DNA of 34,176 nucleotides. Source: Octopus bimaculoides. Lineage: Eukaryota. Under the pieces are notes generated by a model. That model was not told the DNA's origin. It did no database searches and saw nothing but the letters and a program-made list of their open reading frames with translations. The stretch is from assembly GCF_001194135.2 (NCBI RefSeq), contig NC_069003.1, positions 33,473,372 to 33,507,547 of the forward strand, written 5' to 3'. The position numbers were made by a program, and so were the translations under genes. This document shows, piece after piece, positions 1,524-32,037 of the stretch. Numbering within the stretch: the first letter of the stretch is position 1; each line of letters starts with the position of its first letter.

Positions 1524-2141
1524 AGACAAGATTTTGGTTCCTGAAACCAATCATTTGGTGTCTTCTGACTTTGAAGGTTGGATCTTAATGAATGTTACCA
1601 ATGCTGCCGACTCTTGGACCATCATGCCAGCTTCCAATATGGGTCTTTACCTCAAAATCACTGACATGAGCACAGGTGGGTCTTTTTCGCTCTTTGTTAT
1701 TTACTTACATCTAAATACTCATCTAGTAATACATACATACACACACACATATACTATATAATACACATACATGTAGTTCGTAAGCAAGCTACTTACCACT
1801 CCGTCCAGATATGTTCAAGGAACACATACACACATGCAGCTGAATATATTTATCCGCTTTCATAAATGCTCACATAAACACACACGTATGTTAGCATACA
1901 TACAAGTACACACACACACAGTGTATTTATTGTGTCAGGCTGTCAAAATACAAAATTAGGGTCAGCGTAAGGAGGGTCAAGTTGGCCATTAGTCTATGGG
2001 GAATTTCATGTAGGGGGTCCCTTTTAAGTGTCCCCACCTACCCTGATCTGATGCACTAACCCTCCATTGACTGGTGGCACTCGTAAATCATAATGTCTAT
2101 TTACCTACATACTGTATGTGTGTAGGTAAGGCAGATGAGTT

Positions 2142-2184
<43 letters not shown>

Positions 2185-2222
2185 GTGTGTGTGTGTGTAT
2201 GTGTTGTGTGTGNNNNNNNNNN

Positions 2223-2262
<40 letters not shown>

Positions 2263-3042
2263 GTGTGTGTGTGTGTATGTGTTGTGTGTGTATGTGTGAG
2301 TGTGTGTATGTTGTGTGAGTGTGTGTGTATTTGATCTTCCGTCCCCCAACTGGCAAAGTTGACTTGGCAACAAAATTCCAACTCACCCCACTCCTCTCAC
2401 CCCACCTCATTACTACTGTTTCATCATCCACCCTCTGTTTTTGTGTTTTTTTTTTTTNNNNNNNNNNCCCCCCCCCAGATACATAAACTTCTCTACTTGC
2501 CTCAGTGAGGTTTCCCTTAACATGCAGAGTACCATCACCATCATTGTTTAACATCCGTTTTCCATGCTGGTATGGGTTGGACAGTTTTGAGTGAAGCTGG
2601 CTAACCGGGGAACCATCCAGACTCCAAATTGGCATGGTTTCTACAGATGGATGCCCTTCCTAACGCCAACCACTTCACAGAGTGTGCTGGGTACTTCTTA
2701 CATGTCACCAACACGAGTGTGCTTATGCAGCGTCAGCACAAGTGCATTTTATGTGGCACCAGCACCCGTAAGGGACAAGCCTGTATGTATGGATGACAGC
2801 GATTTCTTCTTGGCTTCACGTGTCTTCTCAAGTACAGCAAATTGCCACAACTCCTGGTCCCAGGGATGATATGCCGGTGCCCCATTAAAAGGACTCTGTG
2901 CACTTTGTAAAGTGGTTGGCATTAGGAAGGGCATCCAGCCATAGAAACCATGCCAAACACAGACAGTTGAAGTCTGGTGCAGCAGTACTGGCTTGCCATG
3001 TCCTGTCAAAATGTCCAACCCATGCCAGCATGCAAAACGGAC

Positions 3043-3076
<34 letters not shown>

Positions 3077-5490
3077 CAACTGCAACAACTACAATAACAA
3101 TAACATGCCAAGAACTGGGGCAGCATGTACACTGGATAATGTAGTGTCCCACTGAGATTACAAGGGACTGAAATTAAGACAGGGTCGTCATGGGTGGAAC
3201 ACTTTGATCACCTGTCTGCTTGATTAACCTGGGGCTAATCAACAATAGCAACAACAACAACACCTCCCACTTTTCTTCAAAACAACCAAACTGCAACAGA
3301 AAGTGTAAGGATTTTTTCGGAGCTATTTTTTTTAGACCTTTTATTTAAAAAAAGAAATTGTCTTTTCCCTTTTTGATTTACATTTATTGACCCATATTTA
3401 CTTTCTTTTCTTTTCTTTCCATTGTTGTAGGTCAAGAATTAAGACCCAACCATATCGGTATTGTAGGACATAGAGGAGACCCCGATAAACAGGCCTTTTT
3501 GGTCTGCTTTTTCAAGATGAGTCAACAGCTTCATGTACGACGAACACGTTCTGCACGCCGGNNNNNNNNNNAGTCAACAGCTTCATGTACGACGAACACG
3601 TTCTGCACGCCGGCAAATGGATACTCGTACAGCAGTCTCACATCGGGATGATTCTCACTGGACGTGGAGACGAACACGTTAGTTATTTATTTTCTATGCC
3701 ATGTTTTTCATTGAGGTTACAGTCATGTGACAAAAGTCATATGGTGGCCCATTATTTAGACCAGAGGTTCCCAACCTTATCTTGGGTTTTGTAATCTTGT
3801 GAGCTACATGGCACTCTCAATAGTGCCAGAGCACCAAAAAGCATCCAGTACATGGTGTAAAATGGTTGGTATTAGGAAGGGCATCAAGCCATAGAAACCA
3901 TATCAAAGCAGACACTGGAGTGCGATGCAGTCCTAGAACCCAGCAGATCTTTGTCAAACTGTCCAACTCACGTCAGTACAGAACATGGATATTAAATGAC
4001 AATGATGATGGTCTATTGAAATATTGGCAGTGGACAACAGAAGTGGATTGGTCAGTTGGTCATGTGAGCCTACCATCCTATGATAATAATAATAATATTG
4101 GTGATTATCAATGTCTTGTTCTACACGTTTCACTCTCTCTCTCTCTCTTCTCTTCTCTTCTAGGACGTTATGTACGACCAGTCTGTCGAAGAAAGACGAT
4201 GTATGTTGACTTTGAAGATTTAGGCTGGCAGGTGAGATTAAAGATTTGTGTGTGTCTGTCATTAACCATTAGTCTTCTCTTTCAATATATCCAACCTTCT
4301 AGATAATTTGGTGCCTAGAGGAGTGATACCAATCCATTTTAGCTTGGCATCATGATCTTTTAGGTTTTATGGTTAAGACGTTTGCTTCCAAACCATTTGG
4401 TTTCTGGTTCAGTCCTGCTGTGCATCACCTTGGACATGTAGAAGTCAAGGCCATGGCTTCATCAGATATATCAAGGCTCGGGACTTAAGTACATGGTCAA
4501 ATTGTCCTCCATAATTTAATGTACTGGGTGAGAATAATAATTTAAATGGTATGATAAATGAAATAATTGATATAACAAATAAAATGTAATAGAAACCATG
4601 CCACATGTGAATAACCACGCTGCATGTTAGTAACTGCGCCACATGTGAGTAACCAATCCATGTATGAGTAACCACGCCACGTGAGTAATCATGTTACATG
4701 TTAGTAACTATGCAGCTCTTCTTCAAAACCCTGCTCTGACTCCCTTCTTGTGTACTTTAATCTCTCATCCCCTAGCATAATGCTGACCCCCACCTCCCAA
4801 TCTCCCCTGGGATTTGTAGATTTGTGAGATGCATGGTGATCTCAGTAGTGCTGGTGGCACAAAAAAAAACCCCCGATTCAATGCATGTTTCAAAGTGGTT
4901 GGTGTTAAGAAGGGTTTCCAACCGTAGAAACCCTGCCAGTGTTGACACCAGAGCATGATGCTGTCCTTGGACTCATGGGATTTGGTCAAACCATCCAACC
5001 CATTCCAGCATGGAATATGGACATAAAATAATGATGATGATGATGATGATGATAAAGAGATACACCTGTTATCAATATTGGAGATTGATTTTGTCAAGTA
5101 TTTCTTTCCTTTCTTTCTCTGTCCACTACAAATTTCTGGCCCCTTTCCTATGTAAGGAATCAATTAAAAGACATAATTATTTCTTCATTTGCCTTTTTCT
5201 TTATTTTCTCCTTTTTTTTTCCCCCACAGAGTTGGATCATTGCACCTGAGGGTTACTCTGCATTCTACTGCGACGGCGACTGCATATTTCCACTCGGTCT
5301 GAATATGAACGCCACAAATCATGCCATTGTACAACTGTTGCTTCACACAGTGAAATCTCAGACAATGCCTAAGCCATGCTGTTCCCCTACCAAACTGAGT
5401 GCCATCTCTGTGCTCTACTTTGATGATAATTCCAATGTCATTCTCAAGAAATATCGAAGTATGAAGGTGAAGGCTTGTGGCTGTCACTAG
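1524..5490 (+). CDS. BMP5-8: BMP5-8 (gbb/60A, BMP5/6/7/8 subfamily) ligand, copy A; 5'-partial. Exons 1524-1675, 3431-3677 (contains a 52-nt assembly artefact), 4164-4231, 5230-5490 (stop)
   Basis: All exons have AG/GT boundaries and compatible phases (2/1/1/0). Translation gives prodomain ...[10 protein letters not shown]...SNMGLYL..., [10 protein letters not shown], furin site RRTR-S, and a 7-cysteine TGF-beta domain ([37 protein letters not shown]...NATNHAIVQ...[40 protein letters not shown]). NATNHAIVQ and [15 protein letters not shown] are BMP5-8 hallmarks. The introns fall at positions matching those I recall for vertebrate BMP7. Confidence 0.93.
2530..3075. mobile_element. Two oppositely oriented copies of SINE-like family C with (ATG)n tail (2530-2760 -, 2900-3075 +). 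Others: 3865-4020, 4885-5055, 10005-10150 (+)
   Basis: Shared GGTTGGCATTAGGAAGGGCATCCAGCC.TAGAAACCATGCCA...TCCAACCCATGCCAGCATG...GATGATGAT. Confidence 0.7.
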
Positions 5491-5960
5491 TGTTCACCCC
5501 ATACCTCTACGTCTTGTAACACTGTATTGCACACACACACACACATTCATTGGANNNNNNNNNNCATTGATGCATGTGTGCATGGGACGGCTGAGTGCAC
5601 TTGCAATGCCACTGTCCTGCTTTTTCTTTTTCTTTTGTGTTTTCAATTTGAGTGTGCAACAAATGTTGCACATTTGCAGGTATCAGGATTTAGTATTTTT
5701 TTATGTACAGTCTCTATGGACATATGATGAATGAATGTGTATGGCTGTGTGTGTGTGTGTGTGTGTGTATGGCTGTATGTGTGTGTGTGAGTATGGCTGT
5801 GTGTGTATGCTTGTATATATCTGTATACCCCTTTCAATTCATGTTACAGTTGGTAAGGTCTTCAAGAATACTGCTGAAAACAACTAAACAAGAACAAATT
5901 AGAAAATATACAGTGTGTGTTTGTAGCACAACATACACACGCATACATATACATACATAC

Positions 5961-8008: not shown

Positions 8009-9451
8009 AGTGCAAATGGAATATAAAAGGACTAGAGAGAAAAAAAAATCATTTAAAAATAAATAGTAAAGCTCACCCTACCAAAAAAACCCCCTCAAAC
8101 AAATGACAATATTGTAATAGCAATACCAAAACATATTGATTTGTATATAATTATGACTCCTCTCTCTCTCTCTCTCTCTCTCTTATTTCCTCATCTTAAC
8201 TGTTTCATATATTTTGTAACTTTTATGGTATAATATTAACAATAAAACAAACAACACCAATCAAAGACGATGATGTTTTATAATGATTATAAATACATTT
8301 ACATCTATACAGCCACTGATAGTGCTATATCTGCGTTGTTATTATCACATCTTTGGATCTACTGTACAAATGGTAGCTTCAGTAGTGCGAAATGATATCA
8401 CATTTTCTGNNNNNNNNNNNNNNNNNNNNNNNNNNNNNNNNNNNNNNNNNNNNNNNNNNNNNNNNNNNNNNNNNNNNNNNNNNNNNNNNNNNNNNNNNNN
8501 NNNNNNNNNNNNNNNNNNNNNNNNNNNNNNNNNNNNNNNNNNNNNNNNNNNNNNNNNNNNNNNNNNNNNNNNNNNNNNNNNNNNNNNNNNNNNNNNNNNN
8601 NNNNNNNNNNNNNNNNNNNNNNNNNNNNNNNNNNNNNNNNNNNNNNNNNNNNNNNNNNNNNNNNNNNNNNNNNNNNNNNNNNNNNNNNNNNNNNNNNNNN
8701 NNNNNNNNNNNNNNNNNNNNNNNNNNNNNNNNNNNNNNNNNNNNNNNNNNNNNNNNNNNNNNNNNNNNNNNNNNNNNNNNNNNNNNNNNNNNNNNNNNNN
8801 NNNNNNNNNNNNNNNNNNNNNNNNNNNNNNNNNNNNNNNNNNNNNNNNNNNNNNNNNNNNNNNNNNNNNNNNNNNNNNNNNNNNNNNNNNNNNNNNNNNN
8901 NNNNNNNNNNNNNNNNNNNNNNNNNNNNNNNNNNNNNNNNNNNNNNNNNNNNNNNNNNNNNNNNNNNNNNNNNNNNNNNNNNNNNNNNNNNNNNNNNNNN
9001 NNNNNNNNNNNNNNNNNNNNNNNNNNNNNNNNNNNNNNNNNNNNNNNNNNNNNNNNNNNNNNNNNNNNNNNNNNNNNNNNNNNNNNNNNNNNNNNNNNNN
9101 NNNNNNNNNNNNNNNNNNNNNNNNNNNNNNNNNNNNNNNNNNNNNNNNNNNNNNNNNNNNNNNNNNNNNNNNNATGTGTGTATATGTATGTATGTATGTA
9201 TATATGAGTGTGTATGTATGTATGTATATATGTGTGTATATGTATGTATGTATGTATATATATGTATGTATGTATGTGTGTATATATTTGTGTGTATGTG
9301 TATATATGTGTGTACAAAGTATGGAGGTTTAGTTCACAGGTGATCTAAACGATTAGGTACGCTAGGTAAGCAAAATAACACTGACATCTCATTTTAACAG
9401 ATATATTTACCAAAATTACATAAGAATATCTGGAAATACTAAAAAGTAAAT

Positions 9452-11420: not shown

Positions 11421-14400
11421 ATGGTTGTCTCATTTACTGTGTTGTTACTATGTTTAGTCTGGTCACATGCAGTCGAAGGTTCGAAAACAGACAACGGCAA
11501 AAGACCACAAGAGGTTACCACGTCTCTCGGCTCTGTAGTGGTGGTCGGGGCTGGAGTTGCCGGATTAGCAGCGGCCAGGTCCCTCACCAACTCTGGCCAG
11601 TGGGATGTTACTGTGTTAGAAGCACGAAAGGAGCGCTATGGGGGTCGTGTGTGGACCGACCGCATCAACTTTGACCGTGCAAAAGGTAAGAAGAAATTGC
11701 TTCCGCTTCATGTTTGTTGGTCATTTGGTATTTTAATAGATTTAATTAAAGACAGTGAACTAATTATAACAACGGGCAAACAAATCTATACAACCTTCTT
11801 ATGTAAAGCAGATATCGCTATTAAGGAAAACTACCATTCCAGTATCTTCCTATTTTAGCGGCGTAAAATCGTGTTACCTTTTAAGTGTTTTTCTTCTGTC
11901 ACGGCCAGAAAATTACCTTTTTTTAAAAAAGTTTGTTACTGTGTACTTTTTTCTAAAAAGTAAATTAGTCAATAAAATAAAATTGTACAAACAGTTCTTG
12001 TTTTCCATTTAATTTGTCTTTCATCCCGTAAGTTTCTGAAAAATGGGTATTTTTAGATGAAATTTTCTACTGATACCTTTCCGATGGTTTGAATTAGGAT
12101 TATATCGGAATTTAATGTGGTGGGGGAAAATAAAATTACTTTCTCTCCAGCTAGTAATCTAATAACTACTTAGTGCTGAACTTGCTAGAAATAACAGCCA
12201 AATTCTCACATCATATTCTACTAGCTTTAAAAAAAAGTAAGGTTTCTTTTAATAACCTAATCCTGGTGATCTTTGNNNNNNNNNNNNNNNNNNNNNNNNN
12301 NNNNNNNNNNNNNNNNNNNNNNNNNNNNNNNNNNNNNNNNNNNNNNNNNNNNNNNNNNNNNNNNNNNNNNNNNNNNNNNNNNNNNNNNNNNNNNNNNNNN
12401 NNNNNNNNNNNNNNNNNNNNNNNNNNNNNNNNNNNNNNNNNNNNNNNNNNNNNNNNNNNNNNNNNNNNNNNNNNNNNNNNNNNNNNNNNNNNNNNNNNNN
12501 NNNNNNNNNNNNNNNNNNNNNNNNNNNNNNNNNNNNNNNNNNNNNNNNNNNNNNNNNNNNNNNNNNNNNNNNNNNNNNNNNNNNNNNNNNNNNNNNNNNN
12601 NNNNNNNNNNNNNNNNNNNNNNNNNNNNNNNNNNNNNNNNNNNNNNNNNNNNNNNNNNNNNNNNNNNNNNTTCATAGAGTAAAAACCTGTTTCTTTCTTC
12701 TCCACAGAAAATCTGAAGAACTCACTGTAAGAAATATTAACCATCAACTAACTTCACTTAAAGTAAAATATATTCCATTTTAAATTCAAATTACGACAAA
12801 CGTAAATAAACAAACGAAGTTTGCTTTTAGAAGCTTTGAGATGTCTTAGAAAGTTAAAGAAGTGATTTTAAATTCTCAATCGCAGAATAATGCTAATAAT
12901 ATAGCCTGAACAGGATAAAATACCCCTATTTTGCAGAGAAAAGTGTAGGGGGCTAGCTGTGGCCACCTACACTTTTCTCTGCAAAATTAGGGGTAGTTTA
13001 TCCTGTTCAGGCTATAATATTCCATTTTCTTTTTTTTTTTGGTTAATAGGTCTTGAAGCTGATCTGGGAATTGTTATGTTTGATGATGATGACCCTGAGA
13101 ACATGCTGAGTGAATTTTTGGGTCCATTTGAAGTGAGTCCAAAGCGTATTGAATTGAAGCAGTTGATTGATGGTAACACAAACAAAGTCTACCGTGATCT
13201 GGAGTTTGAAAATCTGGCTCAGATCCATCAACAGGTGAGTTATTTGTTACCCATCGCAATCTCCTATACACTAACTACCGAGACATTCAGCTTTGATAAC
13301 CCAAGTAGACATAGACCAACAAAGTGATTATTTCACAGGTTACACTCAACCTAAATATTTTCCTGCATACTTCGTATCTCCCCTCTGCTGTCGTATACCC
13401 ACTCTACACAACAAGGTCAAGCTAACATACCTTGTCACATATTAACATGACATACCAACGACAGGGCTTCTCTATGGTTGCTCGACCTGCTAGAAATAGC
13501 AGTCAAGTCTCCTTGATCGCACCCTACCATTTTTAGAATAACAAGTATGGTCATTGCTGGAATGCCTGGTCAGTTACAGTTAGTTGTATGTCTGTCTGGT
13601 CAGAGTTGACTTGATTTAAACCACAACATACAGTATGGCATAGCTGCCGTATTCCATCACTTCTATACTCTATAACAATGGTTCTCAGCCATTTTCCCCC
13701 TCCGAATCCCTTTCATTCCTATTTCACTAACTTGGACCCTGATAGCCATTCAATGTTTAAAAAATCTTAAATTTTTACAATACTTTTTACAAACAGGGAG
13801 TCAGTCAGTCAGACAGCACTGGCAACAGCCATGCTCTCAAATAGTGTCTTTTATGTTCCAGTGACACGGGAGACAGTCAGGTGGCACTAGCAGTGGCCAT
13901 GCTTGAATAGTGCTTTTTATGTGCCACCGGGCCAGGACCAGTCAGGTGGCACTGACAGCAGCCATGCCCTCAAATGGTGTTTTTTATGTGCCAGTGACAC
14001 GGGAGACAGTCAGGTGGCACTGGCACCAGAAGTATATTATTATATTATGAACTACTATTAAAGACATGTAGTGGTCTGTAAATAATTCTTCCAAATTTTG
14101 GTTCAAGGGCAGCAGTTTTGAGGGGAGGGGAAGTCAATTACATCGACCCTCCCCCCCAATGCTCAATGAAAGACTTTATGATGTTAATTACATAATCACT
14201 GTGTAATCCATTTCCTATAATTGTTTCTCTTTTTCCCCCTTCGACAGCTTTTAATGGCTGCCGTGCAGACTTCCAGTTCACCAACCAAGGACGTTTCATT
14301 GCAAGAAGCCATTGACAATTTATATCGACTGCAACCAGTTTTCAAAGAGACCCTTCCACCAAACGTCTTCACTACTTTGACTTTAGCCAGATACAATCTG

Positions 14401-17400
14401 GCCCCAAAGTTAATCTCTTGCAGGTCCTTGAAATCTCGCTTTAACTTGCTCCCTAATACAGTTATTGAAGAAGGGTTCCAAGAAGTCCTCGACAGGTAAC
14501 ATCTTCCTTTTTTGATTCGTTAATTATTGACAGGGCCATTTGTATATTTGTAGCAGAGATGTCTGACTGATTCAATCACCCAGTACATTACTGGTATGTT
14601 CCTCTCTCATTCCCATGTAGCCCTTTCTCTGCTCTTTTAAATAAATCAGATGAATCCCTTTTCTTCTTTTACTTTTCATGAAAAACATTGTTTAAACATT
14701 TTAGGTTGGTCAGTGGTGTTGAGCTGGAAGAAGCACCGTTAAATCTGGAGATGAATAAGGTAGTTTCTCAGATCAAGATAGCCCAAGTGGACAATACCAG
14801 TAAGGTTTTGGTCCGAACCAAGGATCGGCGCCAGAAGAAAGCAGATGCAGTCATTGTTGCTGTGCCATTAGGGGTTCTCAAAGCCTCCCGAATAGCGTTT
14901 GATCCTGTACTACCTGTTGAAAAACGTGTGGCTTTGAATTCCTTAGGTAAGGTGAAATTTATGACACAAAACAGCTCATTCATAAAAGCAAACCTTTTAA
15001 TAATAATAATAATAATAATAATCCTTTCTACTGGAGATATAAGGCCTCAGATTTGTGGGGAGGGGACTAATTGATTACATTGACCCCAGTGTTTCACTGG
15101 TACTTAATTTATTGACCCCGAAAGGATGAAAGGCAAAGTCGACCATGGCGGAATTTGAACTCAGAAGAGATTGGCCCCCCCCCCCGTACTTGTTTTTTAA
15201 AGTCTGGTACCTATTATCATCTGTCTTGCTGAACTACTAAGTTACAGGGATGTAAACAAACCACCATCGGTTGCAATGTGGGACAAACACAACACTAAGA
15301 CACACACATAGATACATACATTAACACATACACACTCTTATGAGTGGTTTCTTTCTGTTTCTGTCCACGAAATTCTCTCAGGGGCTATAATAGGAAACAA
15401 TTACCCAAGATGCCACACAGTGAGACTGAACCTGGGACCATGTGGTTGGGAAGTAAATGTCTTACCACATGCCACACCAGTGTAATTATGATTTGTGTAC
15501 ATGTGAATCTGTATTTGTCATCTAGTTTCCATTCATGATGTATTAAGTATAATCTTTCTTTCTTTTTTTTCTTCCATTTCTTCACCCAACGTACAGAGGT
15601 TAGCAGTGTGAATAGTGTTGTCTTTAAATTTGCTTCAATATTTTGGCCGAGGGACACAGAACTCTTCCATTTTGCTGTATCCGATATGAGTGAAATTGGA
15701 TTGATGACCACTTGGTTAAACACTGGCTGGTTGTCTCGTCGTAAGGATCCATATTTGACCACCTTTATCCAAGGCAATACTGCTACCAAGTTTGGAAATT
15801 ACTCTGACACCCAACTTAAAACTATCGGTTTGTATCTTAAAACTATTTATTCATATCAAATATCAAAGAACATGGGATCTTCTGTGTTTTGTCTCCGTCT
15901 TACGAATGAGTAACTAGTAACTCTGTTACTTCAAACCTTATTTCCTTGAGGAAATCTTAAAGAAATTTATTCCAGTTTTAACTATTTTATAAAGAGAATA
16001 TTAGTTCTTGTTTAACCCCAGGTCAGCCTCAATTGAGTAAATTCATGATTCATGATCAGAGGTCTTCTGTTTGTGACACTTCATCCTGTTTTTTTCTTTT
16101 GTTATTGGTGGGAGTGTGATTAAGGAAGATTTGGCTGCTATTTCTAGCAGGTTGAGTGATTACATAAAGGCTTTTTTGTTTGCTTCAAGGTGTTGGTCAA
16201 ACAGTAATGTTGTTTGTGTGTCTGACTGTCTGAAAGACAATAACTTCCATACAAAACTCCAATAACTAACAATTCTCTTGACTGTTTCTTCTAGCACTGG
16301 AACGGTTGACAGCAATGTTTCATTTGAAGAATTTGTCCAAAGATGCCATCTTGAGTGTGACATCAAGTAACTGGGCATCTGATCCTTTCAGTCAGGGACT
16401 TCTCTCTTACCCCACCATTGGTGAGTATTCTCATGTCAATTTTAGTTATCTAGATGTGTGCGTGTGTGGGACATGATAGCCTCATCTTGTCATATGATGG
16501 CCATTTCACATTCAACCTGATTAGTTTAATTTACTTTCATCATTACATGTGCATGAATAGTCACTATGCAGCCATCACCATAGAATTTTATAAAATACAA
16601 ATCAGATCAAGAAATGAATAGTGAGACATCAGTATGTCTTTGGATTTAACCCTTGCGTTAATGTATTTATTTTGAGATGCTCTGTGTTTCTTTCAATTAT
16701 TTTAAATATAAATAAGAACTTAGTAAAATAACTTAGTTAACATTAAGCTGGTGTTAGGAACATAAATTGTGACTAAGGTTTGGTGGAAGATTTTAATTCA
16801 AAACTTATGAAAACAAAACATTTGTGCTACAGAGCCAGAGACAGTTTCAGCTGGGTTGGTATCAAAAGGGTTAAGTGATAAATGCTTGCACAACTCTTTT
16901 GCCACTCTCTCAGTCACCAATGACAAGCTTTGCAAGATATCAGGTCCTATTTTAACTATAAGACTAGAAGTCTTGCTGCCTCCATTGAAATGGCGCCAAT
17001 CTGTAAAAATGTTTGTTTGCTTTAGTGAAGAAACATCACTAAGTTTTGTCTCCAAAGATTTAACATATACACCACCCATTACCCCACCTCGCTCTTCTCC
17101 ATGTGTTAATGGTGTTGACTCATTTCACAGACCTTTGATGGCAGAGTTTTTTTTTTATATTTATGTTCTATCTTTTACTTGTCTCAATCATTGAAAAGCG
17201 GCCAGTCTGGGGCACCAGATTCAAAGGTTTAGTCTAGTGGTTCTCAACCGGGATCCATATGACCGTTTTGGGGCTGTTGTAGAAGACACTCGCTCAAAGT
17301 GCCACACCATGGGACTGAACTTGGAACCATGTCGTTGAGAAGCAAACTTCTTACCACACTGCCATGCCTGTACCTATTTCTTTTATTATTTAAGAATAAT

Positions 17401-17797
17401 TTTTGTTATAACGTTGTTGATGCAGGGTTTTTTTTGTTTTTTTTAATCCTTTTCACTCAGCATTCTATATCAGAAATATTGTTTCTCATTTTCATCCTTT
17501 TCTCTCTGACCGAAAGGTATGTCCCAAACCCAGTGGGACGCTGTCTCCAAGCCTATCTGTCCTCACATCTACTTCGCCAATGACTATACTGACTCCACCA
17601 GATTCGGGACCATCCAGGGGGCGTTTAGATCTGGACTCCGAGCAGCTGAACACCTCATGCAAGGGTGCCGTGGCAATGTCCCAGACCCCAAAATGAGATA
17701 TTTAAAAGAACCGAAGGGATCTAGAAAAAGAGGTCACGGAAAAAAGCAGGTCAGAGCAAGCGTAACGGTCAACAGAACCAAGAAAGAAGAACTATGA
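11421..17797 (+). CDS. Flavin-containing amine oxidase family protein (polyamine oxidase/LSD1-like fold), 525 aa, signal peptide, C-terminal KEEL. Exons 11421-11685, 13050-13234, 14248-14495, 14705-14946, 15597-15827, 16295-16420, 17517-17797
   Basis: Seven AG/GT exons join in frame (1578 nt including stop). Motifs appear in family order: VVVVGAGVAGLAAA (GxGxxG), VLEA...GGRVWT, DLG, ADAVIVAVPLGVLK...F.P.LP, F...FW, W.SDPFSQG..SY, FANDYT...GTIQGAFRSGLRAA. The N-terminus MVVSFTVLLLCLVWSHAVEG is hydrophobic. No orthologue name can be assigned from the sequence alone. Confidence 0.88.
12780..13016. mobile_element. Foldback MITE-like element with terminal hairpin (arms 12900-12949 / 12966-13016); related copy at ~31845-32040
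   Basis: Arms are near-perfect reverse complements. The same arm sequence (AAACAAACGAAGTTTGCTTTTAGAAG...GTGATTTTAAATTCTCAA; TATAGCCTGAACAGGATAAA) recurs at 31.85-32.04 kb. Confidence 0.75.
13795..14028. repeat. ~70-bp tandem repeat (about 3.3 units, CAGTCAGGTGGCACT...GCCATGC...TTTTATGTGCCA)
   Basis: Direct repetition is visible. A related motif occurs inside the family C SINE copy at ~2745-2765. Confidence 0.7.
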
Positions 17798-19064: not shown

Positions 19065-19275
19065 AGCTGGCAGAATAGTTAGCATGCTGGACGAAATGTT
19101 TATTGGTATTTCATCTGTCTCTATATTCTGAGTTCAAACTTCGTTGAGGTCGACTTTGCCTTTCATCCTTTCGGGGATTTGATAAATTAAGTACCAGTGA
19201 AACACTGGGGTTGATGTAATCAACTTACCCCTCCCCCAAAATTCCAGGCACAAGGCCTTCAGTAGAAAGGATTAT
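19065..19275 (+). mobile_element. SINE-like family B copy. Others: 24415-24590 (+), 31395-31570 (+), 15040-15165 (-), 27100-27190 (-), 27640-27825 (-), 31235-31365 (-), 32125-32200 (-)
   Basis: Repeated GCTGGCAGAAT.GTTAGCA...TTCTGAGTTCAAAT..CG..GAGGTCGACTTTGCCTTTCATCCTTT.GGGG..GATAAATTAAGTACCAGT core with a tRNA-like GAGTTCAAAT box. Confidence 0.75.
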
Positions 19276-19729
19276 GTATATACCAGTAGCCCTTAAACAT
19301 GTATTGGTATCCGTGTTACATTCCTGAAGTATGCATCAAAATGTGTGTTGCATTCCTTAAATATGAATCACCATCTGTGTTACATTCTTTAAATATGTAT
19401 CGATACCTGTGTCACATTAATATGTATCAGAATCTGTGTTACATTCATTTACTTGTCTCATACAACAATGTATCATTTATATTTTTCTAGAAATAAAGAA
19501 ATCATCGTTTTTAATAAAGCTTCTACTCTTATCTCTTGCTATTTTTCTCTTTATACGACATTAACCTATTAGCTTTTAAACCAACCATATCCGACCAAAG
19601 TGTTCTGCCTGTTTTGTGTCCGAAGCAGTCAGATCCAGCCTCTCACCCCTACCTTAAAAATAAACTATCACATCATTGAAATTTCAAAGCTATGAGATAA
19701 TACATTAATATATACGATGTGTGTGAGGG

Positions 19730-21123: not shown

Positions 21124-22078
21124 NNNNNNNNNNNNNNNNNNNNNNNNNNNNNNNNNNNNNNNNNNNNNNNNNNNNNNNNNNNNNNNNNNNNNNNNNNNNN
21201 NNNNNNNNNNNNNNNNNNNNNNNNNNNNNNNNNNNNNNNNNNNNNNNNNNNNNNNNNNNNNNNNNNNNNNNNNNNNNNNNNNNNNNNNNNNNNNNNNNNN
21301 NNNNNNNNNNNNNNNNNNNNNNNNNNNNNNNNNNNNNNNNNNNNNNNNNNNNNNNNNNNNNNNNNNNNNNNNNNNNNNNNNNNNNNNNNNNNNNNNNNNN
21401 NNNNNNNNNNNNNNNNNNNNNNNNNNNNNNNNNNNNNNNNNNNNNNNNNNNNNNNNNNNNNNNNNNNNNNNNNNNNNNNNNNNNNNNNNNNNNNNNNNNN
21501 NNNNNNNNNNNNNNNNNNNNNNNNNNNNNNNNAAAGAAATTTGTGGGGAAAATCTTTTCCAATAAAATTTTATGAAATTTCAATGAAATACCTTTCAAAC
21601 GGCATAGAAATTTGTGGAGAGAGTCTTTTCCAAGAGGGTGGGGAGAGGACTTCGGGAAATTCATAAGATCCGAGCTTTTCCGTCGTAACTCAATAGAGAG
21701 TGCGCTAAATGTAAAAAAAAACCTCTTTCCATCAGGAAGGGTACATTTACAGAATTTATTTTAATAACATGAACTGTCTGTATAAAGAATCAAATGAAAA
21801 AGAGTGGAAAGTTTTGTAAATAGGGGCAGGGTAAGGTTGAATATTTAAGAGAATTTGCAGCGTGTGAGATGTTTGTAAGCAATTCCAGAACAACAAAAGC
21901 CGTTACTTTCACTGCAAAGTTTAAATTTCGTTTGTGTCTAAATATTTTCGTTCTTTGAGACAGCAAAACCCTGATGATTCCGACAATCTGATGGTCTACA
22001 TCGGTTAAGAATTAAATTGGAAACAAAATACTGAAGTGTTACCTCCCTTGCAGTTGCTAAGAAACTATCTTACTGATG

Positions 22079-25907: not shown

Positions 25908-25928
25908 TTTATTTTTTTGCATTTTATT
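25908..25928 (-). promoter_or_regulatory. Two candidate AATAAA polyadenylation signals of BMP-B
   Basis: TTTATT at 25923-25928 and 25908-25913, ~380-400 nt downstream of the BMP-B stop. Confidence 0.4.
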
Positions 25929-26308
25929 GTTTTCAGCAGTATTCTTGAGGACCTTACCAACTGTAACAATGAATTGAAGGACGCATACAGATATATATAC
26001 ATGCATACATACACTCACACACAGACAGCCATACACACACACACAGCCATACACATTCATTCATCATATGTCCATAGAGACTGTACATAAAAAAATACTA
26101 AATCCTGATACCTGCAAATGTGCAACATTTGTTGCACACTCAAATTGAAAACACAAAAGAAAAAGAAAAAGCAGGACAGTGGCATTGCAAGTGCACTCAG
26201 CCGTCCCATGCACACATGCATCAATGTCTTTCGGCTAGCAGGAGTCCAATGAATGTGTGTGTGTGTGTGCAATACAGTGTTACAAGACGTAGAGGTATGG
26301 GGTGAACA

Positions 26309-29300
26309 CTAGTGACAGCCACAAGCCTTCACCTTCATACTTCGATATTTCTTGAGAATGACATTGGAATTATCATCAAAGTAGAGCACAGAGATGGCAC
26401 TCAGTTTGGTAGGGGAACAGCATGGCTTAGGCATTGTCTGAGATTTCACTGTGTGAAGCAACAGTTGTACAATGGCATGATTTGTGGCGTTCATATTCAG
26501 ACCGAGTGGAAATATGCAGTCGCCGTCGCAGTAGAATGCAGAGTAACCCTCAGGTGCAATGATCCAACTCTGTGGGGGAGAAAAAAAGGAGAAAATAAAG
26601 AAAAAGGCAAATGAAGATATAATTATGTCTTTTAATTGATTCCTTACACAGGAAAGGGGCCAGAAATTTGTGACACACACAAATACACACATGCAGATTC
26701 ATGTACACTCAGATATACACATGGATACATAAATGCACACAGATACATATGCAGACACAAATAGAGACATGCATAGATGCACACACACAAATACATAGAT
26801 ACACGCATATAGATATATACATGTACAAACACAGATACATACATACACCATACACACACACACACACACAGTTACGCACATGTACACATGATGGACTCCT
26901 TCAGTTACTGTCGACCACTTTCACTCACCAAAAATGCAGAGAGAAACAAAAGCCTTACCTGCCAACCTAAAGCTTCAAAGTCAACATACATTGTATTTCT
27001 TTGGCAGACTGGTCGTACATAACGTCCTAGAAGAAGAGAACAGAGAGAGAGTGAAACATGTAGAACAAAACATTAATATTCTTTGCTACTCTAAGCACAA
27101 GGCCTGAAATTTTGGGGGAGGGGTGTCAGTCGATCAAATTGACCCCAGTATGCAACTGGTACGAAAGGCAAAGTCGACCTCAGGAGAGGGGAAGGCGTTG
27201 AACTAGCAGAATCATTACTGTGCTGAGCAAAATACTTAGAGGCATGAGTGTATTTGAAATGGAATAATTTAAGAAGAGAGTGGAGTGAACAGTGTGATTG
27301 CAGAATCCCAAAAGCACAAGTTCTGCTGGGGCTGGACATCCTACGAGATTTACAGACAACAGGTGGACCTGCACAATTGCTGAATGGTAACCAAGAGATC
27401 AGAAAAGGCCACTTTGAAGGCCTCCATGATGGTCATTTGAAAGGCCGACTGAATGGGCAACAGTAGTTATGTAATCCCTGTTGTGTGTGTGTATACACTT
27501 AAACCAAACATTACATGAAATGCAGAGCTAGCTCCTTTAGTTTCATATTTAAGACAAAAATTGCCCATTACCCAATGAGATTAAATCTGTGATATTTGAG
27601 GTGCCTCTAAATTACATATTCTTTTCTACTCTAGGCACAAGGCCTGAAATATTTTTGGGGAGGTGGCCAATCGATTAGATTGACCCCAGTACACAACTGG
27701 TACTTAATTTATTGACCCCAAAAGGATGAAAGTCAACCCCGGCAGAATTTGAACTCAGAATATAAAGACGGATGAAATACCGCTAAGCATTTTGCCCGGT
27801 GTGCAAATGTTTCTGCCAGCTCACATTAGTATTATTAGTATTATTATCATTATTACTATTATCATTATATATTGCAATCAATCTTTGAATGAAATCTTTA
27901 GTACATAATGATTAATAGTGACTGCAGAATATTTTAAATTTCAGTGTAGTACATGTTATCATTGGGCCACTATATGACTTTTGTGACATGATTGTAACCG
28001 CAAAGTAGAACAGCAAAAGAAAATGATGACTAACGTGTCCGTCTCCACGTTGACTGAGAATCATCCCGACGTGAGACTGCTGTACGAGTATCCATTTGCC
28101 GGCGTGCAGAACGTGTTCGTCGTACATGAAGCTGTCGACTCATCTTGAAAAAGCAGACCAAAAACGCCTGTTTATCAGGGTCTCCTCTATGTCCTACGAT
28201 ACCGATATGGTTGGGTCTTAATTCCTGACCTACAACAGTGGAAAGAAAAGAAAAGAAAGTAAATATGGGTCAATAAATGGAACAGTAAATCAGAATGGGA
28301 AATAAAGGGTAAGAGAAAAAGACTAAAACATGAGCAGTTAAGGACTTTTAAAGCTCAACACTTTAGCATTTAAACTGGCCATATCCGGCCCAAATATTCT
28401 GTTGTGTGTGTCTGTGTATTTGTTTGTTTCCCACTCACCCATCACTTGACAACTGGTGTTAATTTGTTTTTGTTTATGACCCTGTGACTTGGTGGTTCAA
28501 CAAAAAGAGAATGATAGAGTAAGTACCAGACTTAAAAAATCATAAGTACTGGGGTTGATTCGCTTGGCTAAAACCCTTCAAGGTGGTGCCCCACCTGAGC
28601 TGCAGTTGAAAGACTGAAACATATAAAAAAATAAAAAGATGATTAAATAAAAGAACCAAAAAAAAAAATGTATGAAAATCCCACCTGTGCTCATGTCAGT
28701 GATTCTGAGGTAAAGACCCATATTGGAAGCTGGCATGATGGTCCAAGAGTCGGCAGCATTGGTAACATTCATTAAGATCCAACCTTCAAAGTCAGAAGAC
28801 ACCAAATGATTGGTTTCAGGAACCAAAATCTTGTCTCTGAAACAAAAGAAAAAATTCTTTATTAAAACACAAATGGTTGGAAGCAACATTTTAAAGGAAG
28901 AACAAACGAGAAGCTGTGATGTACATGCCTTTCTTCTTCCAATGAACAGTATTAGTAACATGAGAGAACTAATATAAGCTAGTCAGGTAACTTTGTAATT
29001 AGTCAACCAGTGAAGTACCCCCCACAATGAACTCAACCCTTTTACTTTAACATTGTAGGGGCGGGGTTTTGATTTCCCAATCTCAAGATGGTAAAAAAAG
29101 TTCCCAACTCAAGTGTGTTTAGTAGCTCTGGCTGGATATGTGGTTCTGAATTATACAAAAGCCAAAAGACAGAGACAGGTGAGGGAACAATAGACAGGTG
29201 GATCTGTTTGATGCTCAGCAAAAATGCAAGAAGAAGTCTTTGATGTTTCAAGCCTACACTTTTCTGGATATCTCTACTGATGAAATCCTGAAGTTCAGCC

Positions 29301-32037
29301 TAAACTAACAGGCTGACTGGCACACATACATACACATGCATGCACACACACACACACAAGAGATACACCAGCAACAAACCACAAATATACAGACACTATG
29401 AAAGGAGCACTAAAATATACACATACCAACACATGGACACTATCAAAAGGGCACCAACCACACACAGAAAAACATTATTAACCCTTTTGTTACCAATCTG
29501 ACTGAAACCACCTCTGGCTCTGTAGTACAAATGTCTTGTTTTCACAAGTTCTAAATTAAAATCTTCCACCAAACCTTAGTCACAATTTATGTTCCTAACA
29601 CTAGCCTAATGATAACGAAGTTATTTTACTAAATTCTTTGTTATNNNNNNNNNNTCACAATTTATGTTCCTAACACTAGCCTAATGATAACGAAGTTATT
29701 TTACTAAATTCTTTGTTATATTCAAAATTAATTGAAAGAAACATAGAGCATCTCAAAATAAATATGGTAATGAAAGAGTTAAAGGAGAACCAACATATGC
29801 ACTCACACACTGTTATCATACAGACCTATCACATTATCCCAAATGCACACAGCCACACACACATACTAATACCCCCCCCCCCCCNNNNNNNNNNNNNNNN
29901 NNNNNNNNNNNNNNNNNNNCCCCCATCAGATGATAAGGCTCCACTGCACCCATCCCATTCCTTGTCTTCTAAGGAATCACAGAAGCCACAGACCATGATA
30001 TAGAAACTCTTTCAGCCTCTCTCTTTCACACAGTTACACACAAACATAAACATATGTAGCTGCACACCCACACAGATACACAAAGCTACACACACATACA
30101 TACAGCCCCCACACACATACAAACAAAACTACACACTCACACAGACACACAAAGCTACACACACACACACATACACACACACTATGTTTTCCAATTATAA
30201 TTTCAGACATGTCTTATTAATTAACACAGACATACTTTTACAGATGGAACTACAACAGCATGAAGTGCTGTCGCCAACACCACTGTATACACTAACTTAT
30301 AAAAACAATATCCAAGTTACTCCTGGAATGTACCAAACTTCCCAAGAAACACCATTCTACAAGACTCAGTGGAAAATGAGAAAAGAAGAGCGAGGGTGAG
30401 ACAGAGGATGGGTGGCAGTTGTCTGTCTTCCAAAGCCATATTTCTAATATTCTGTCTATACGTTTTGGTTGTTGGAAAATAATTATGAATTTGAGGAGGT
30501 TTGATAAAATAACATTATTATTATTACCCTTGGTGTTCAGGGAGATCTTCGACAGTGGGGTTCTTTGATTATCCCTAGAAGTCATTTTGTATCAGGAGAA
30601 CTACATCTCTATCTTTACCCCACTTCTTTTTTGTTAACCTTTGTATAATGGGTGTATTTCCCTTCCTTTTCATTGTATACCGGGTATACTTACTCTTTTT
30701 TATTTGCTTATTTATTTATTTTATCATTTCATTATAAGTAAACCCCAACACTTAGGAGTAAAGATTATTTGCCAACATAACATGACAGTCCTGGTTTAGG
30801 ATGAATGTTGCTGTAATTTAGCCCCAGGAGACATCGTCTCCAGCTGGCTATACAACAGGATCTGTGTCCTTATATTTTCAAACAAGGGAATCTAGCACCC
30901 CCACTCAGCTCAAAACAATATCTGTGTATAGTGATTTCCGGGTGCTAGATTCCCTTGTTCGAAAATATAAGGACACAGATCCTGTTGTATAGCCAGCTGG
31001 AGATGATGTCTGCTGGGGCTAAATTACAGCAGCATTTGTCCTAAACCAGGACTGCCATGTTATGTTGGCAAATAATCTTTACTCCAAAGTACTGTTGCTG
31101 AATATCTCTTGTTGTGAGATCTAAAAATATTAATTTCCCCCACACTTTGTTCTGTATTGTCCCCCTCCCCCTCCGTCCTGGTGGCAAATAAATGAAGTCA
31201 TTATTATTATTATTATCATTGGTTTCAAATCTTGGCACCAGGCCAGCAATTTTAGGGGAGGGGATGAGTGAATTACATTAACCTCAGAGTTTAACAGGTA
31301 CTTATTTTATCGACCCTGAAAGGATGAAAGGCAAAGTCGACCTCAGCGGAATTTGAACTCAGAATCTGAAACCAATATCAAAAATTTTAAGGCAGTGAGC
31401 TAGCAGAATCAGTAGAGCATCGGATAGAATCTTTAGTGTTCTGTCTTTTTATGTTTAGAGTTCAAATTTTGCTAAGGCTTGATAAAATAAGTACAAGTCA
31501 AGCATTGGGGGTCAATGTATTCGACTAATCCCTCCTCTAAAAATTGCTGGCTTTGTGTCAAAATTAGAGAGAAATATTACAAATTTTAATCACATTAACA
31601 TGTGTGAACGTGTATTTTAAAACGGTTTTCTTTTAAGTTAGCAATCAAAAACTTTGAAGTCATAAATAATTGGAGAGGATTTATTTCTGGTTACTGCAGG
31701 GAAGGAAGAGATATTTTTAGACACAAGAAAGGAAAACTTGCATGTTGTGGAGTCCATTCTTAATCCCAGCAATATTAAAAAGGAAATGGTACTAATTAAG
31801 AATTCAAAACTGCGTCATAAAATTATTAATAATAGTAAATTCAAATTATGATAAATGTAAACAAACAAACGAAGTTTGCTTTTAGAAGTGTTGAGATGTC
31901 TTAGAAAGTTAAAGAAGTGATTTTAAATTCTCAAACGGCCGCCTACACTTTTTTTCTGCAAAATAGGGGTAGTTTATCCTGTTCAGGCTATATTATTAGC
32001 ATTATTCTGCGTTTGAGAATTTAAAATCACTTCTTTA

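What the first reader, a model, noticed from the sequence alone, without database searches (positions are those of the whole stretch)
15597..17600. The oxidase-like protein has lost the catalytic lysine and an aromatic-cage tyrosine: probable pseudoenzyme or new chemistry
Seen, by ungapped manual alignment to recalled LSD1 sequence: MGFGNLNKVVLCFDRVFW vs LEVSSVNSVVFKFASIFW, so the flavin-N5/water lysine (LSD1 K661, maize PAO K300, MAO-A K305) is Ser (AGT, 15614-15616). WRADPWARGSYSY vs WASDPFSQGLLSY, so the cage Tyr (LSD1 Y761) is Leu (16402-16404). FAGEHT is FANDYT (17579-17584). DLGAxWIHG is DLGIVMFDD, lacking the polyamine-oxidase His. GxGxxG, GGR and SGLRAA are intact and the frame is open. 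Inference: FAD binding and fold are retained under selection, but classical amine oxidation with O2 is impaired. It may be a binding or chaperone-like protein or a dehydrogenase using another acceptor.
Basis: partly seen in the sequence, partly recalled or inferred. Interest (0 to 1): 0.7.

Follow-up and report, generated by a model that had tools for sequence, protein, structure and literature searches.

The report
Cephalopod ER flavoprotein missing catalytic lysine
The region is the 3' half of an intact octopus gene for an amine-oxidase-fold flavoprotein that carries endoplasmic-reticulum targeting signals, has lost the lysine almost all such oxidases keep next to the flavin, and is still under clear purifying selection, so it is a working protein whose chemistry has probably changed.

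Summary
The window is Octopus bimaculoides DNA. The finding covers exons 5-7 of a 7-exon gene (11421-17797, + strand) encoding a 525-aa PF01593 protein identical to XP_014779148. HMMER and MAFFT alignments place Ser320 opposite LSD1 K661, Leu427 opposite Y761 and Asn454-Asp455 opposite the G-E of FAGEHT. In the 115 nearest non-mollusc homologues these columns are K 111/115, Y 106/109 and G-E 109/109.

- The protein has a hydrophobic N-terminal signal-like segment and ends in KEEL.
- It belongs to an uncharacterised family found here only in molluscs. All 18 full-length members end in [KR][DE]EL, which points to the ER lumen.
- Non-cephalopod members keep Lys (or Arg). Only coleoid cephalopods have replaced it: Asn in decapodiforms, Ser in octopods.
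- Cephalopods also changed the TVHGA His to Gln.
- The whole family lacks the cage Tyr and the WIHG His. LSD2 also lacks that His.

dN/dS is 0.11-0.17, so the gene is not decaying. The FAD dinucleotide-binding motifs are invariant. The AlphaFold model is confident and matches LSD2, LSD1 and maize PAO.

Best reading: an ER-lumen flavoprotein retained for a function other than efficient O2-coupled amine oxidation. Whether it is a pseudoenzyme or performs new chemistry remains untested.

The parts
11421..11685 (+). Exon 1: start codon, hydrophobic signal-like N-terminus (residues 1-20, 11421-11480), GxGxxG (11547-11564), Glu67 (11619-11621), RYGGR (11634-11648)
   Evidence: Gene model built by hand. 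It is identical to NCBI protein XP_014779148. Hydrophobicity maximum 2.78 at residues 2-11. These motif columns are invariant in the family.
13050..13234 (+). Exon 2: DLGIVMFDD (13061-13087) in place of the DLGAxWIHG consensus. Asp100 (13082-13084) is cephalopod-specific; other molluscs have Asn and most homologues have His.
   Evidence: The N gap at 12276-12670 lies inside intron 1 and hides no exon, because the exon 1/2 junction reproduces the annotated protein.
14248..14495 (+). Exon 3: helical substrate-domain segment
   Evidence: Same exon in O. sinensis and Argonauta. pLDDT above 90.
14705..14946 (+). Exon 4: DAVIVAVPLGVL segment of the FAD domain
   Evidence: D280, A285 and P287 are invariant in the family.
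15597..15827 (+). Exon 5: strand carrying Ser320 (AGT 15614-15616) opposite LSD1 K661; conserved N-glycosylation sequon N381-Y-S (15797-15805)
   Evidence: DSSP of the model places residues 318-325 in a beta strand with pLDDT about 97.
16295..16420 (+). Exon 6: WASDPFSQGLLSY with Leu427 (CTC 16402-16404) opposite LSD1 Y761
17517..17797 (+). Exon 7: Cys447 (17558-17560), FANDYT (17573-17590), Gln466 in place of the TVHGA His (17615-17617), SGLRAA (17630-17647), Cys483 (17666-17668), basic tail, KEEL (17783-17794) and stop (17795-17797)

Best explanation
Shown:
- The region is the 3' part of a functional, single-copy octopus gene.
- Its product is a 525-aa two-domain flavin-amine-oxidase-fold protein.
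- It is the cephalopod orthologue of an uncharacterised family recovered here only from molluscs. Members carry a signal-like N-terminus, two family-specific cysteines and a C-terminal KDEL/KEEL/RDEL/REEL.
- In gastropods and bivalves the family keeps the flavin-N5 lysine (or Arg).
- In coleoid cephalopods the lysine was replaced. The simplest path is AAR Lys to AAY Asn (still seen in cuttlefish-type sequences) to AGY Ser (octopods).
- The same lineage also changed the TVHGA His to Gln, the 'WIH' position Asn to Asp, and the NP Pro. Octopus itself added G454N. E455D is shared by Octopus and Argonauta.
- The gene evolves under purifying selection.

Inferred:
- The protein is a soluble resident of the ER lumen.
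- It still binds FAD through the intact dinucleotide-binding motifs.
- Without the Lys-water-N5 device it reacts poorly with O2 and with classical amine substrates.
- It has therefore been kept for an altered role: either oxidation of a different substrate or use of a different acceptor, or a ligand-binding or scaffolding role in the ER that needs the fold but not turnover.
For: Gene and protein:
- The gene model is clean and equals the annotated protein.
- PF01593 matches at E = 4.8e-54.
- AlphaFold2 gives pLDDT 87.9 and pTM 0.87. Foldseek's top hits are LSD2, LSD1 and maize PAO, with TM 0.7-0.8.
- Residue equivalences come from HMMER and MAFFT.

Family:
- An exhaustive profile search of 1.84 billion representatives returns a discrete set of gastropod, bivalve and cephalopod proteins at E of 1e-98 or better. 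A clear gap separates them from generic oxidases at about 1e-60.
- All 18 full-length members end in [KR][DE]EL, and 17 of 18 have a hydrophobic N-terminus.
- C447 and C483 are invariant in the family and absent outside it.
- The sequon at N381 is conserved in all cephalopods.
- A neighbour-joining tree follows mollusc classes, which indicates orthology.

Lysine column and selection:
- The column reads S, S, S, S, N, N, N in cephalopods. Elsewhere it is K in nine full-length members plus two fragments, and R in three.
- Synonymous variation at the Ser and Asn codons (AGT/AGC, AAT/AAC) shows that these residues are themselves maintained.
- dN/dS is 0.11-0.17 in four pairs. The core values are 0.13 and 0.11, with Fisher p of 5e-11 and 9e-9.
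- The 7-exon structure is conserved in O. sinensis and Argonauta.
- Transcripts of the decapodiform orthologue were assembled from many RNA-seq runs.

Literature:
[quoted passage not shown] The same family contains dehydrogenases such as NicA2 (PMC12272882).
Against: - No biochemical data exist for any family member.
That check rests on alignments only.
- Mutagenesis results recalled from memory, not verified here, indicate the Lys is important but not always essential: a mouse PAO Lys-to-Met mutant mainly slows reoxidation, and LSD1 K661A is reported to keep some activity on nucleosomes. A Ser or Asn could still hold the water.
- FAD binding is inferred. Octopus G454N sits at a Gly that is invariant in 109/109 outgroups, so it might weaken FAD binding.
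- ER residence is inferred from sequence signals only. No signal-peptide predictor was available.
Confidence: 0.55

Rival explanations
1. The protein is still an ordinary O2-dependent amine oxidase in the ER lumen. Ser or Asn holds the N5 water, or the Lys is dispensable for its particular substrate, and the other replacements only retune substrate specificity.
For: - Strong purifying selection.
- Intact FAD motifs.
- The active-site replacements are themselves conserved within cephalopods: D100, Q466, and S or N at position 320. This is what a tuned pocket would look like.
- Three non-cephalopod members have Arg rather than Lys, so the column tolerates change.
- From memory: some Lys mutants of family members keep partial activity.
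Against: - The Lys is K in 111/115 close homologues. It is described as strictly conserved in PAOs and critical for O2 reactivity (PMC7576179, PMC12272882).
- Ser and Asn carry no positive charge to stabilise superoxide formation.
- The loss coincides with loss of the TVHGA His (H in 102/109 outgroups). In Octopus it also coincides with change of the invariant Gly of FAGE.
Confidence: 0.28
2. The protein is a true pseudoenzyme that no longer binds or uses FAD. The fold is kept as an ER-lumen binding, scaffolding or chaperone-like protein.
For: - Hallmark residues were lost stepwise: Tyr and His in the family, then Lys, His466 and Pro107 in cephalopods, then E455D in octopods and G454N in Octopus.
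- The cephalopod lineage is more divergent: 33-37% identity to other classes, against 38-43% between gastropods and bivalves.
- LSD1 has documented demethylase-independent scaffolding roles (PMC10444793).
Against: GxGxxG, E67, RYGGRVWT, DAVIVAVP, T464, G467 and S471-G472 are invariant or nearly so across all cephalopods. That is hard to explain if the cofactor were dispensable, although FAD could be kept as a purely structural ligand.
Confidence: 0.12
3. The gene is a decaying gene or an annotation or assembly artefact.
For: - The draft assembly has many N gaps.
- No octopus transcript was retrieved here.
Against: - The frame is open and all splice sites are canonical.
- The same 7-exon gene is present in O. 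sinensis and Argonauta, and an orthologous protein is annotated in O. vulgaris.
- dN/dS is 0.11-0.17, with p below 1e-8 against neutrality.
- The C-terminal KEEL is preserved.
Confidence: 0.02
4. The protein is a lysine-specific histone demethylase (LSD1/KDM1A), as the public annotation names it.
For: The best PDB sequence and structure matches are the LSD2 and LSD1 amine-oxidase domains.
Against: - Pfam finds no SWIRM domain.
- At 525 aa there is no room for, and no alignment gap indicating, a Tower insertion.
- K661 and Y761 are absent.
- A signal-like N-terminus and KEEL point to the secretory pathway, not the nucleus.
Confidence: 0.01

Closest known systems
LSD2/KDM1B and LSD1/KDM1A amine-oxidase domains
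   Same: - They are the best sequence matches (family profile E = 4e-61 and 1e-59) and the best structural matches (Foldseek E about 1e-36, TM about 0.72).
- They share the two-domain FAD/substrate fold, GxGxxG, GGR and SGLR.
- LSD2 also has Asn at the 'WIH' position, like the non-cephalopod mollusc members.
   Different: - The octopus protein has no SWIRM, zinc-finger or Tower modules.
- It carries secretory and ER signals instead of nuclear ones.
- K661 is replaced by Ser or Asn, and Y761 by Leu or Phe.
- The public name 'lysine-specific histone demethylase 1A' is a similarity-derived misnomer.
Polyamine oxidases (maize PAO1, animal PAOX/SMOX)
   Same: - Same superfamily and fold.
- Maize PAO1 also enters the secretory pathway through a signal peptide (PMC7576179).
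   Different: - Lys300 is reported as strictly conserved in all PAOs (PMC7576179) but is absent here.
- The Tyr aligned with LSD1 Y761 is Y in 106/109 close homologues but absent here.
- PAOs are apoplastic, peroxisomal or cytosolic, not KDEL-retained.
Engineered Lys mutants: maize PAO K300M (PDB 3kpf, 3ku9, 3l1r) and LSD1 K661A/Q
   Same: The octopus protein is a natural equivalent of these mutants: same fold, with the N5-water lysine removed. The K300M structures appear among the Foldseek hits.
   Different: - Those are laboratory loss-of-function variants.
- The cephalopod replacement has been maintained by selection in both octopods and decapodiforms.
- It is accompanied by other active-site changes.
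NicA2-type flavin amine oxidase-family dehydrogenases
   Same: They are precedent that this fold can lose O2 reactivity and pass electrons to another acceptor, a cytochrome c (PMC12272882).
   Different: - NicA2-type enzymes retain the lysine and are bacterial.
- No partner acceptor was identified for the mollusc proteins.
Other ER-lumen flavoproteins (Ero1; FOXRED2/ERFAD, which ends in KEEL), cited from general knowledge
   Same: They share the compartment and the retrieval-signal logic for a soluble FAD protein.
   Different: The folds are unrelated and there is no homology. The resemblance is one of location only and was not tested here.

Membership tests
Flavin-containing amine oxidoreductase superfamily (Pfam PF01593) | Significant match to the family profile across both halves of the domain | tested here: met
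   E = 4.8e-54, 184.8 bits against a cutoff of 19.8
Flavin-containing amine oxidoreductase superfamily (Pfam PF01593) | N-terminal dinucleotide-binding motif GxGxxG ... E plus R-x-GGR | tested here: met
   VGAGVAG, E67 and RYGGR are invariant in all 18 family members
Flavin-containing amine oxidoreductase superfamily (Pfam PF01593) | Two-domain FAD/substrate fold | tested here: met
   AlphaFold2 pLDDT 87.9; Foldseek TM 0.7-0.8 to LSD2, LSD1 and maize PAO
Catalytically canonical flavin amine oxidases (MAO/PAO/LSD type) | Lys hydrogen-bonded through water to flavin N5 (LSD1 K661, maize PAO K300) | tested here: not met
   Ser320 occupies the column in Octopus and Argonauta, and Asn in decapodiforms. 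The column is K in 111/115 close homologues. The test is by alignment only, not by 3-D superposition.
Catalytically canonical flavin amine oxidases (MAO/PAO/LSD type) | Aromatic residue flanking the flavin (LSD1 Y761 column) | tested here: not met
   Leu427; the column is Y in 106/109 homologues. The residue is also absent in every other mollusc family member.
Catalytically canonical flavin amine oxidases (MAO/PAO/LSD type) | FAD bound and reducible by an amine, with reoxidation by O2 giving H2O2 | not testable with these tools
   Requires recombinant protein
LSD1/KDM1 histone demethylases (the public annotation) | SWIRM domain N-terminal to the oxidase domain | tested here: not met
   The query has no PF04433 hit. 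The plant LSD1-like hit P0108 does carry PF04433.
LSD1/KDM1 histone demethylases (the public annotation) | Tower insertion (LSD1) or zinc-finger modules (LSD2) | tested here: not met
   The protein is 525 aa with only 36 residues before the Rossmann strand. The LSD alignments show no insertion.
Soluble ER-lumen resident proteins | C-terminal KDEL-type retrieval tetrapeptide ([KRHQSA][DENQ]EL pattern, from general knowledge) | tested here: met
   The octopus protein ends in KEEL. All 18 full-length family members end in KDEL, KEEL, RDEL or REEL.
Soluble ER-lumen resident proteins | Cleavable N-terminal signal peptide | tested here: inconclusive
   A hydrophobic stretch lies within the first 30 residues in 17/18 members. 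No signal-peptide predictor or experiment was available.
Mollusc [KR][DE]EL-tailed amine-oxidase-like family (defined here) | Profile E-value far below generic oxidases, the C447/C483 pair, Asn or Asp at the 'WIH' position, and a KDEL-type tail | tested here: met
   The tree follows mollusc classes.

The most novel reading that the evidence does not exclude
Two linked claims:
1. Molluscs possess a previously undescribed family of amine-oxidase-fold flavoproteins resident in the ER lumen. This would be a new compartment for the enzyme class.
2. In coleoid cephalopods the family has been converted, under continued purifying selection, into a lysine-less form. That form is either a natural pseudo-oxidase or an enzyme with a new acceptor or substrate chemistry in the ER.
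Probability: 0.35. Interest if true: 0.65.

Novelty: new variant of a known kind. Interest (0 to 1): 0.5.

Why it matters
- The Lys-water-N5 device is one of the most conserved features of flavin amine oxidases and is central to debates on how flavoenzymes control O2 reactivity. A lineage that removed it naturally and kept the protein under selection, with Lys-bearing orthologues in sister classes, offers a ready comparative system. Oyster or abalone protein could be compared with cuttlefish and octopus protein to see what the lysine does and what replaces it.
- A KDEL-tailed amine-oxidase family would add an H2O2-generating or flavin-dependent activity to the ER lumen of a major animal phylum.
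- The public name 'lysine-specific histone demethylase 1A' for these genes is misleading. It could contaminate epigenetic gene inventories of cephalopods.

Tried and rejected
- Prokaryotic ORF listing was of no use because the window is eukaryotic. Exons were joined by hand instead.
- Two of the three word-indexed homologue searches were meant to find Nautilus and more cephalopods. They returned mostly the same generic oxidases and only three new gastropod or bivalve-like members. No Nautilus orthologue was obtained, so the loss cannot be dated within cephalopods.
- Literature searches for the accession numbers, for KDEL plus amine oxidase, and for molluscs plus KDEL plus flavin found nothing relevant.
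- A 3-D check of the flavin N5 surroundings was not possible because model coordinates are not exposed. Only summary statistics and Foldseek scores were available.
- RNA editing as a rescue was considered and rejected. A-to-I editing cannot turn AGT/AGC or AAT/AAC into a Lys codon. It could in principle recode Octopus Asn454 (AAT/AAC) to Gly, which remains untested.
- A lysine-bearing cephalopod paralogue was looked for among the exhaustive-search hits and not found.
- Gene decay was rejected by dN/dS.
- LSD1 identity was rejected by domain content.
Full report
**What the region is.** The window is eukaryotic: it has GT..AG introns, microsatellites, SINE-like repeats and N gaps. Joining open segments by hand gives a 7-exon gene on the + strand. 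The exons are 11421-11685, 13050-13234, 14248-14495, 14705-14946, 15597-15827, 16295-16420 and 17517-17797. All splice sites are canonical and the reading frame is 525 codons. The product is 100% identical over its full length to XP_014779148 of Octopus bimaculoides, which NCBI names 'lysine-specific histone demethylase 1A'. The finding's coordinates (15597-17600) therefore cover exons 5 to 7 only.

**Checking the observation.**
- Ser320 is AGT at 15614-15616.
- Leu427 is CTC at 16402-16404.
- Asn454-Asp455 are at 17579-17584.
- DLGIVMFDD is at 13061-13087.
- GxGxxG, GGR and SGLRAA are intact.

Pfam assigns PF01593 at E = 4.8e-54. After checking numbering against the 852-residue chains, S320 lies opposite LSD1 K661 and L427 opposite Y761. 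A MAFFT alignment with the 115 closest non-mollusc homologues shows how conserved these columns are: K in 111/115, Y in 106/109, W-I-H-G above 90%, and G and E of FAGE in 109/109 each. The deviations are real and lie at positions that almost never vary.

**Structure.** AlphaFold2 with this alignment gives a confident model: mean pLDDT 87.9 and pTM 0.87. The low-confidence regions are residues 1-17 and 19-22, the loop 83-88 and the C-terminal tail. S320 lies in a predicted beta strand (residues 318-325) with pLDDT about 97. Foldseek against the PDB returns LSD2, LSD1 and maize polyamine oxidase at E of 1e-34 to 1e-36 and TM 0.7-0.8. No Lys occupies any column aligned to the flavin-contacting segments (residues 96-98, 320, 427, 464-465).

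The N-terminus (MVVSFTVLLLCLVWSHAVEG) is hydrophobic and signal-like, and the protein ends in KEEL. An exhaustive HMMER search with a profile of the five first orthologues against 1.84 billion representatives found a discrete group at E = 1e-98 to 1e-265. Generic oxidases followed at about 1e-60. Source names show that every identifiable member of this group is a mollusc:
- Gastropods: Patella (two species), Haliotis, Bulinus, Littorina, Gigantopelta.
- Bivalves: Sinanodonta, Ylistrum, Ostrea, Argopecten, Pinctada.
- Cephalopods: Octopus (three species), Argonauta, and decapodiform transcripts.

Accession numbers cited in papers link the decapodiform transcripts to RNA-seq runs from Sepia pharaonis and Sepia esculenta.

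Features shared across the family:
- All 18 full-length sequences end in KDEL, KEEL, RDEL or REEL.
- 17 of 18 have a hydrophobic N-terminus. The exception, Bulinus, looks like a truncated gene model.
- Two cysteines (C447, C483) are invariant in the family and absent from outgroups.
- A sequon at N381 is kept in all seven cephalopod sequences.

A neighbour-joining tree recovers bivalves, gastropods and cephalopods as clades, as expected for orthologues. I infer a soluble ER-lumen flavoprotein family. None of its members is characterised, and no paper mentioning it was found.

**The losses are layered**.
- Whole family: it lacks the Tyr761-equivalent and the His of WIHG, with Asn in its place. 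LSD2 also has Asn there (IVNG), so that change is not evidence of inactivity.
- Lysine column outside cephalopods: the residue is retained. It is K in nine full-length members and in the Argopecten and Pinctada fragments, and R in the two Patella species and one unnamed gastropod-like transcript.
- Lysine column in coleoid cephalopods: only these have lost it. It is Asn (AAT/AAC) in three decapodiform sequences and Ser (AGT/AGC) in Octopus and Argonauta. This fits single-nucleotide steps from AAR to AAY to AGY.
- Other cephalopod changes at otherwise invariant positions: the TVHGA His is Gln (H in 102/109 outgroups), the Pro of the NP motif is replaced, Asn100 is Asp, and Gly335 and Gly369 are changed.
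- Octopods: E455D.
- Octopus genus only: G454N, at a Gly that is invariant in 109/109 outgroups.

A-to-I RNA editing, which is frequent in coleoids, cannot regenerate a Lys codon at position 320. It could in principle recode Asn454 (AAT) to Gly, which is untested.

**Selection.** I recovered the orthologous coding sequences from the O. sinensis and Argonauta hians genomes. Both have the same seven exons, and their translations equal the annotated proteins. Decapodiform coding sequences came from transcript contigs. Nei-Gojobori dN/dS values:

| Pair | dN/dS | dS |
|---|---|---|
| O. bimaculoides - O. sinensis | 0.167 | 0.13 |
| Two Sepia-type sequences | 0.168 | 0.075 |
| Octopus - Argonauta | 0.114 | 1.68 (near saturation) |
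| Two decapodiform lineages | 0.158 | 1.09 (near saturation) |

Restricted to the core (residues 37-482), the two unsaturated pairs give 0.13 and 0.11, with Fisher p of 5e-11 and 9e-9 against equal rates. Synonymous differences at the Ser and Asn codons show that those residues are themselves conserved. The gene is clearly not decaying. Cephalopod sequences are somewhat more divergent from other classes (33-37% identity) than gastropods are from bivalves (38-43%). This is compatible with a burst of change on the cephalopod stem, but that was not formally tested.

**Interpretation.** The literature read here says that Lys300 is strictly conserved in all polyamine oxidases, MAOs and putrescine oxidase surveyed (PMC7576179). 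[quoted passage not shown] The FAD dinucleotide-binding motifs are strictly conserved in cephalopods. The best-supported reading is therefore an FAD-binding ER-lumen protein whose classical O2-coupled amine oxidation is strongly attenuated and which is retained for an altered function. I put 0.55 on that. The remaining weight is:
- 0.28 that it is still a competent oxidase with a retuned pocket.
- 0.12 that it is a cofactor-independent pseudoenzyme.
- About 0.03 in total for gene decay or a genuine LSD1.

**Comparison with known families.** The protein works like, and is a member of, the PF01593 superfamily. Its nearest solved relatives are the LSD2 and LSD1 oxidase domains, followed by PAOX, SMOX and maize PAO. 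It is not an LSD1. It has no SWIRM domain, no Tower insertion, no K661 and no Y761, and it carries secretory signals. It also fails the 'strictly conserved Lys' criterion for polyamine oxidases. It is best filed as a new variant: a cephalopod, lysine-less branch of an undescribed mollusc family of KDEL-tailed amine-oxidase-like flavoproteins.

**Limits.**
- No activity, cofactor or localisation data exist.
- No signal-peptide predictor was available.
- No 3-D superposition was possible.
- No Nautilus sequence was obtained.
- dS is saturated for the deep pairs.

Noticed in passing
window 116-5888 (+) and 25923-30389 (-): The oxidase-like gene sits between two inverted copies of a TGF-beta/BMP-family gene. 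Copy A has a propeptide exon at about 1475-1680 and a mature-domain last exon ending ...KVKACGCH* at 5487. Copy B, on the minus strand, has its last exon at 26312-26698 and a propeptide exon at about 28680-28886. The arms are 84-98% identical in patches. Pfam confirms TGF_beta (E = 2e-37) and TGFb_propeptide. This is either a real inverted segmental duplication or an assembly artefact of a gap-rich draft.
   Followed up: partly
window 17579-17581 (codon 454, AAT): Octopus Asn454 replaces a Gly that is invariant in 109/109 outgroups. Its codon (AAT in O. bimaculoides, AAC in O. sinensis) could be recoded to Gly by A-to-I editing of both adenosines. The decapodiform Asn320 codon (AAT/AAC) differs from the octopod Ser codon (AGT/AGC) by exactly an A-to-G change. 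Both patterns are of the kind seen at cephalopod editing sites. No RNA data were examined.
   Followed up: no
window 17558-17560 and 17666-17668 (Cys447, Cys483): Two cysteines are invariant in all 18 mollusc family members and absent from 115 outgroup homologues. They may form a family-specific disulfide between the strand before FAGE and the end of the C-terminal helix, which would fit an oxidising compartment. Distances could not be measured.
   Followed up: partly
window 15405-15480, 17290-17360; also 15015-15166 vs 19126-19279 (inverted) and 16714-16874 vs 29478-29638 (inverted): Short interspersed repeat copies (for example ...CCACACCATGGGACTGAAC..TGGAACCATGT.GTTG.GAAGCAAA...) recur in the introns and flanks in both orientations. 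They are probably octopus SINE-type elements.
   Followed up: no
window 12276-12670, 8410-9173, 21124-21532 and eleven shorter N runs: These are assembly gaps. The 395-base gap at 12276-12670 lies inside intron 1 of the oxidase-like gene. It does not hide an exon, because the exon 1/2 junction reproduces the annotated protein.
   Followed up: yes
public annotation of XP_014779148 and its orthologues (P0001, P0002, P0121-P0123): NCBI product names ('lysine-specific histone demethylase 1A', '... 1 homolog 3') are similarity-derived and misleading. The proteins lack SWIRM and Tower modules and carry ER-targeting signals.
   Followed up: yes
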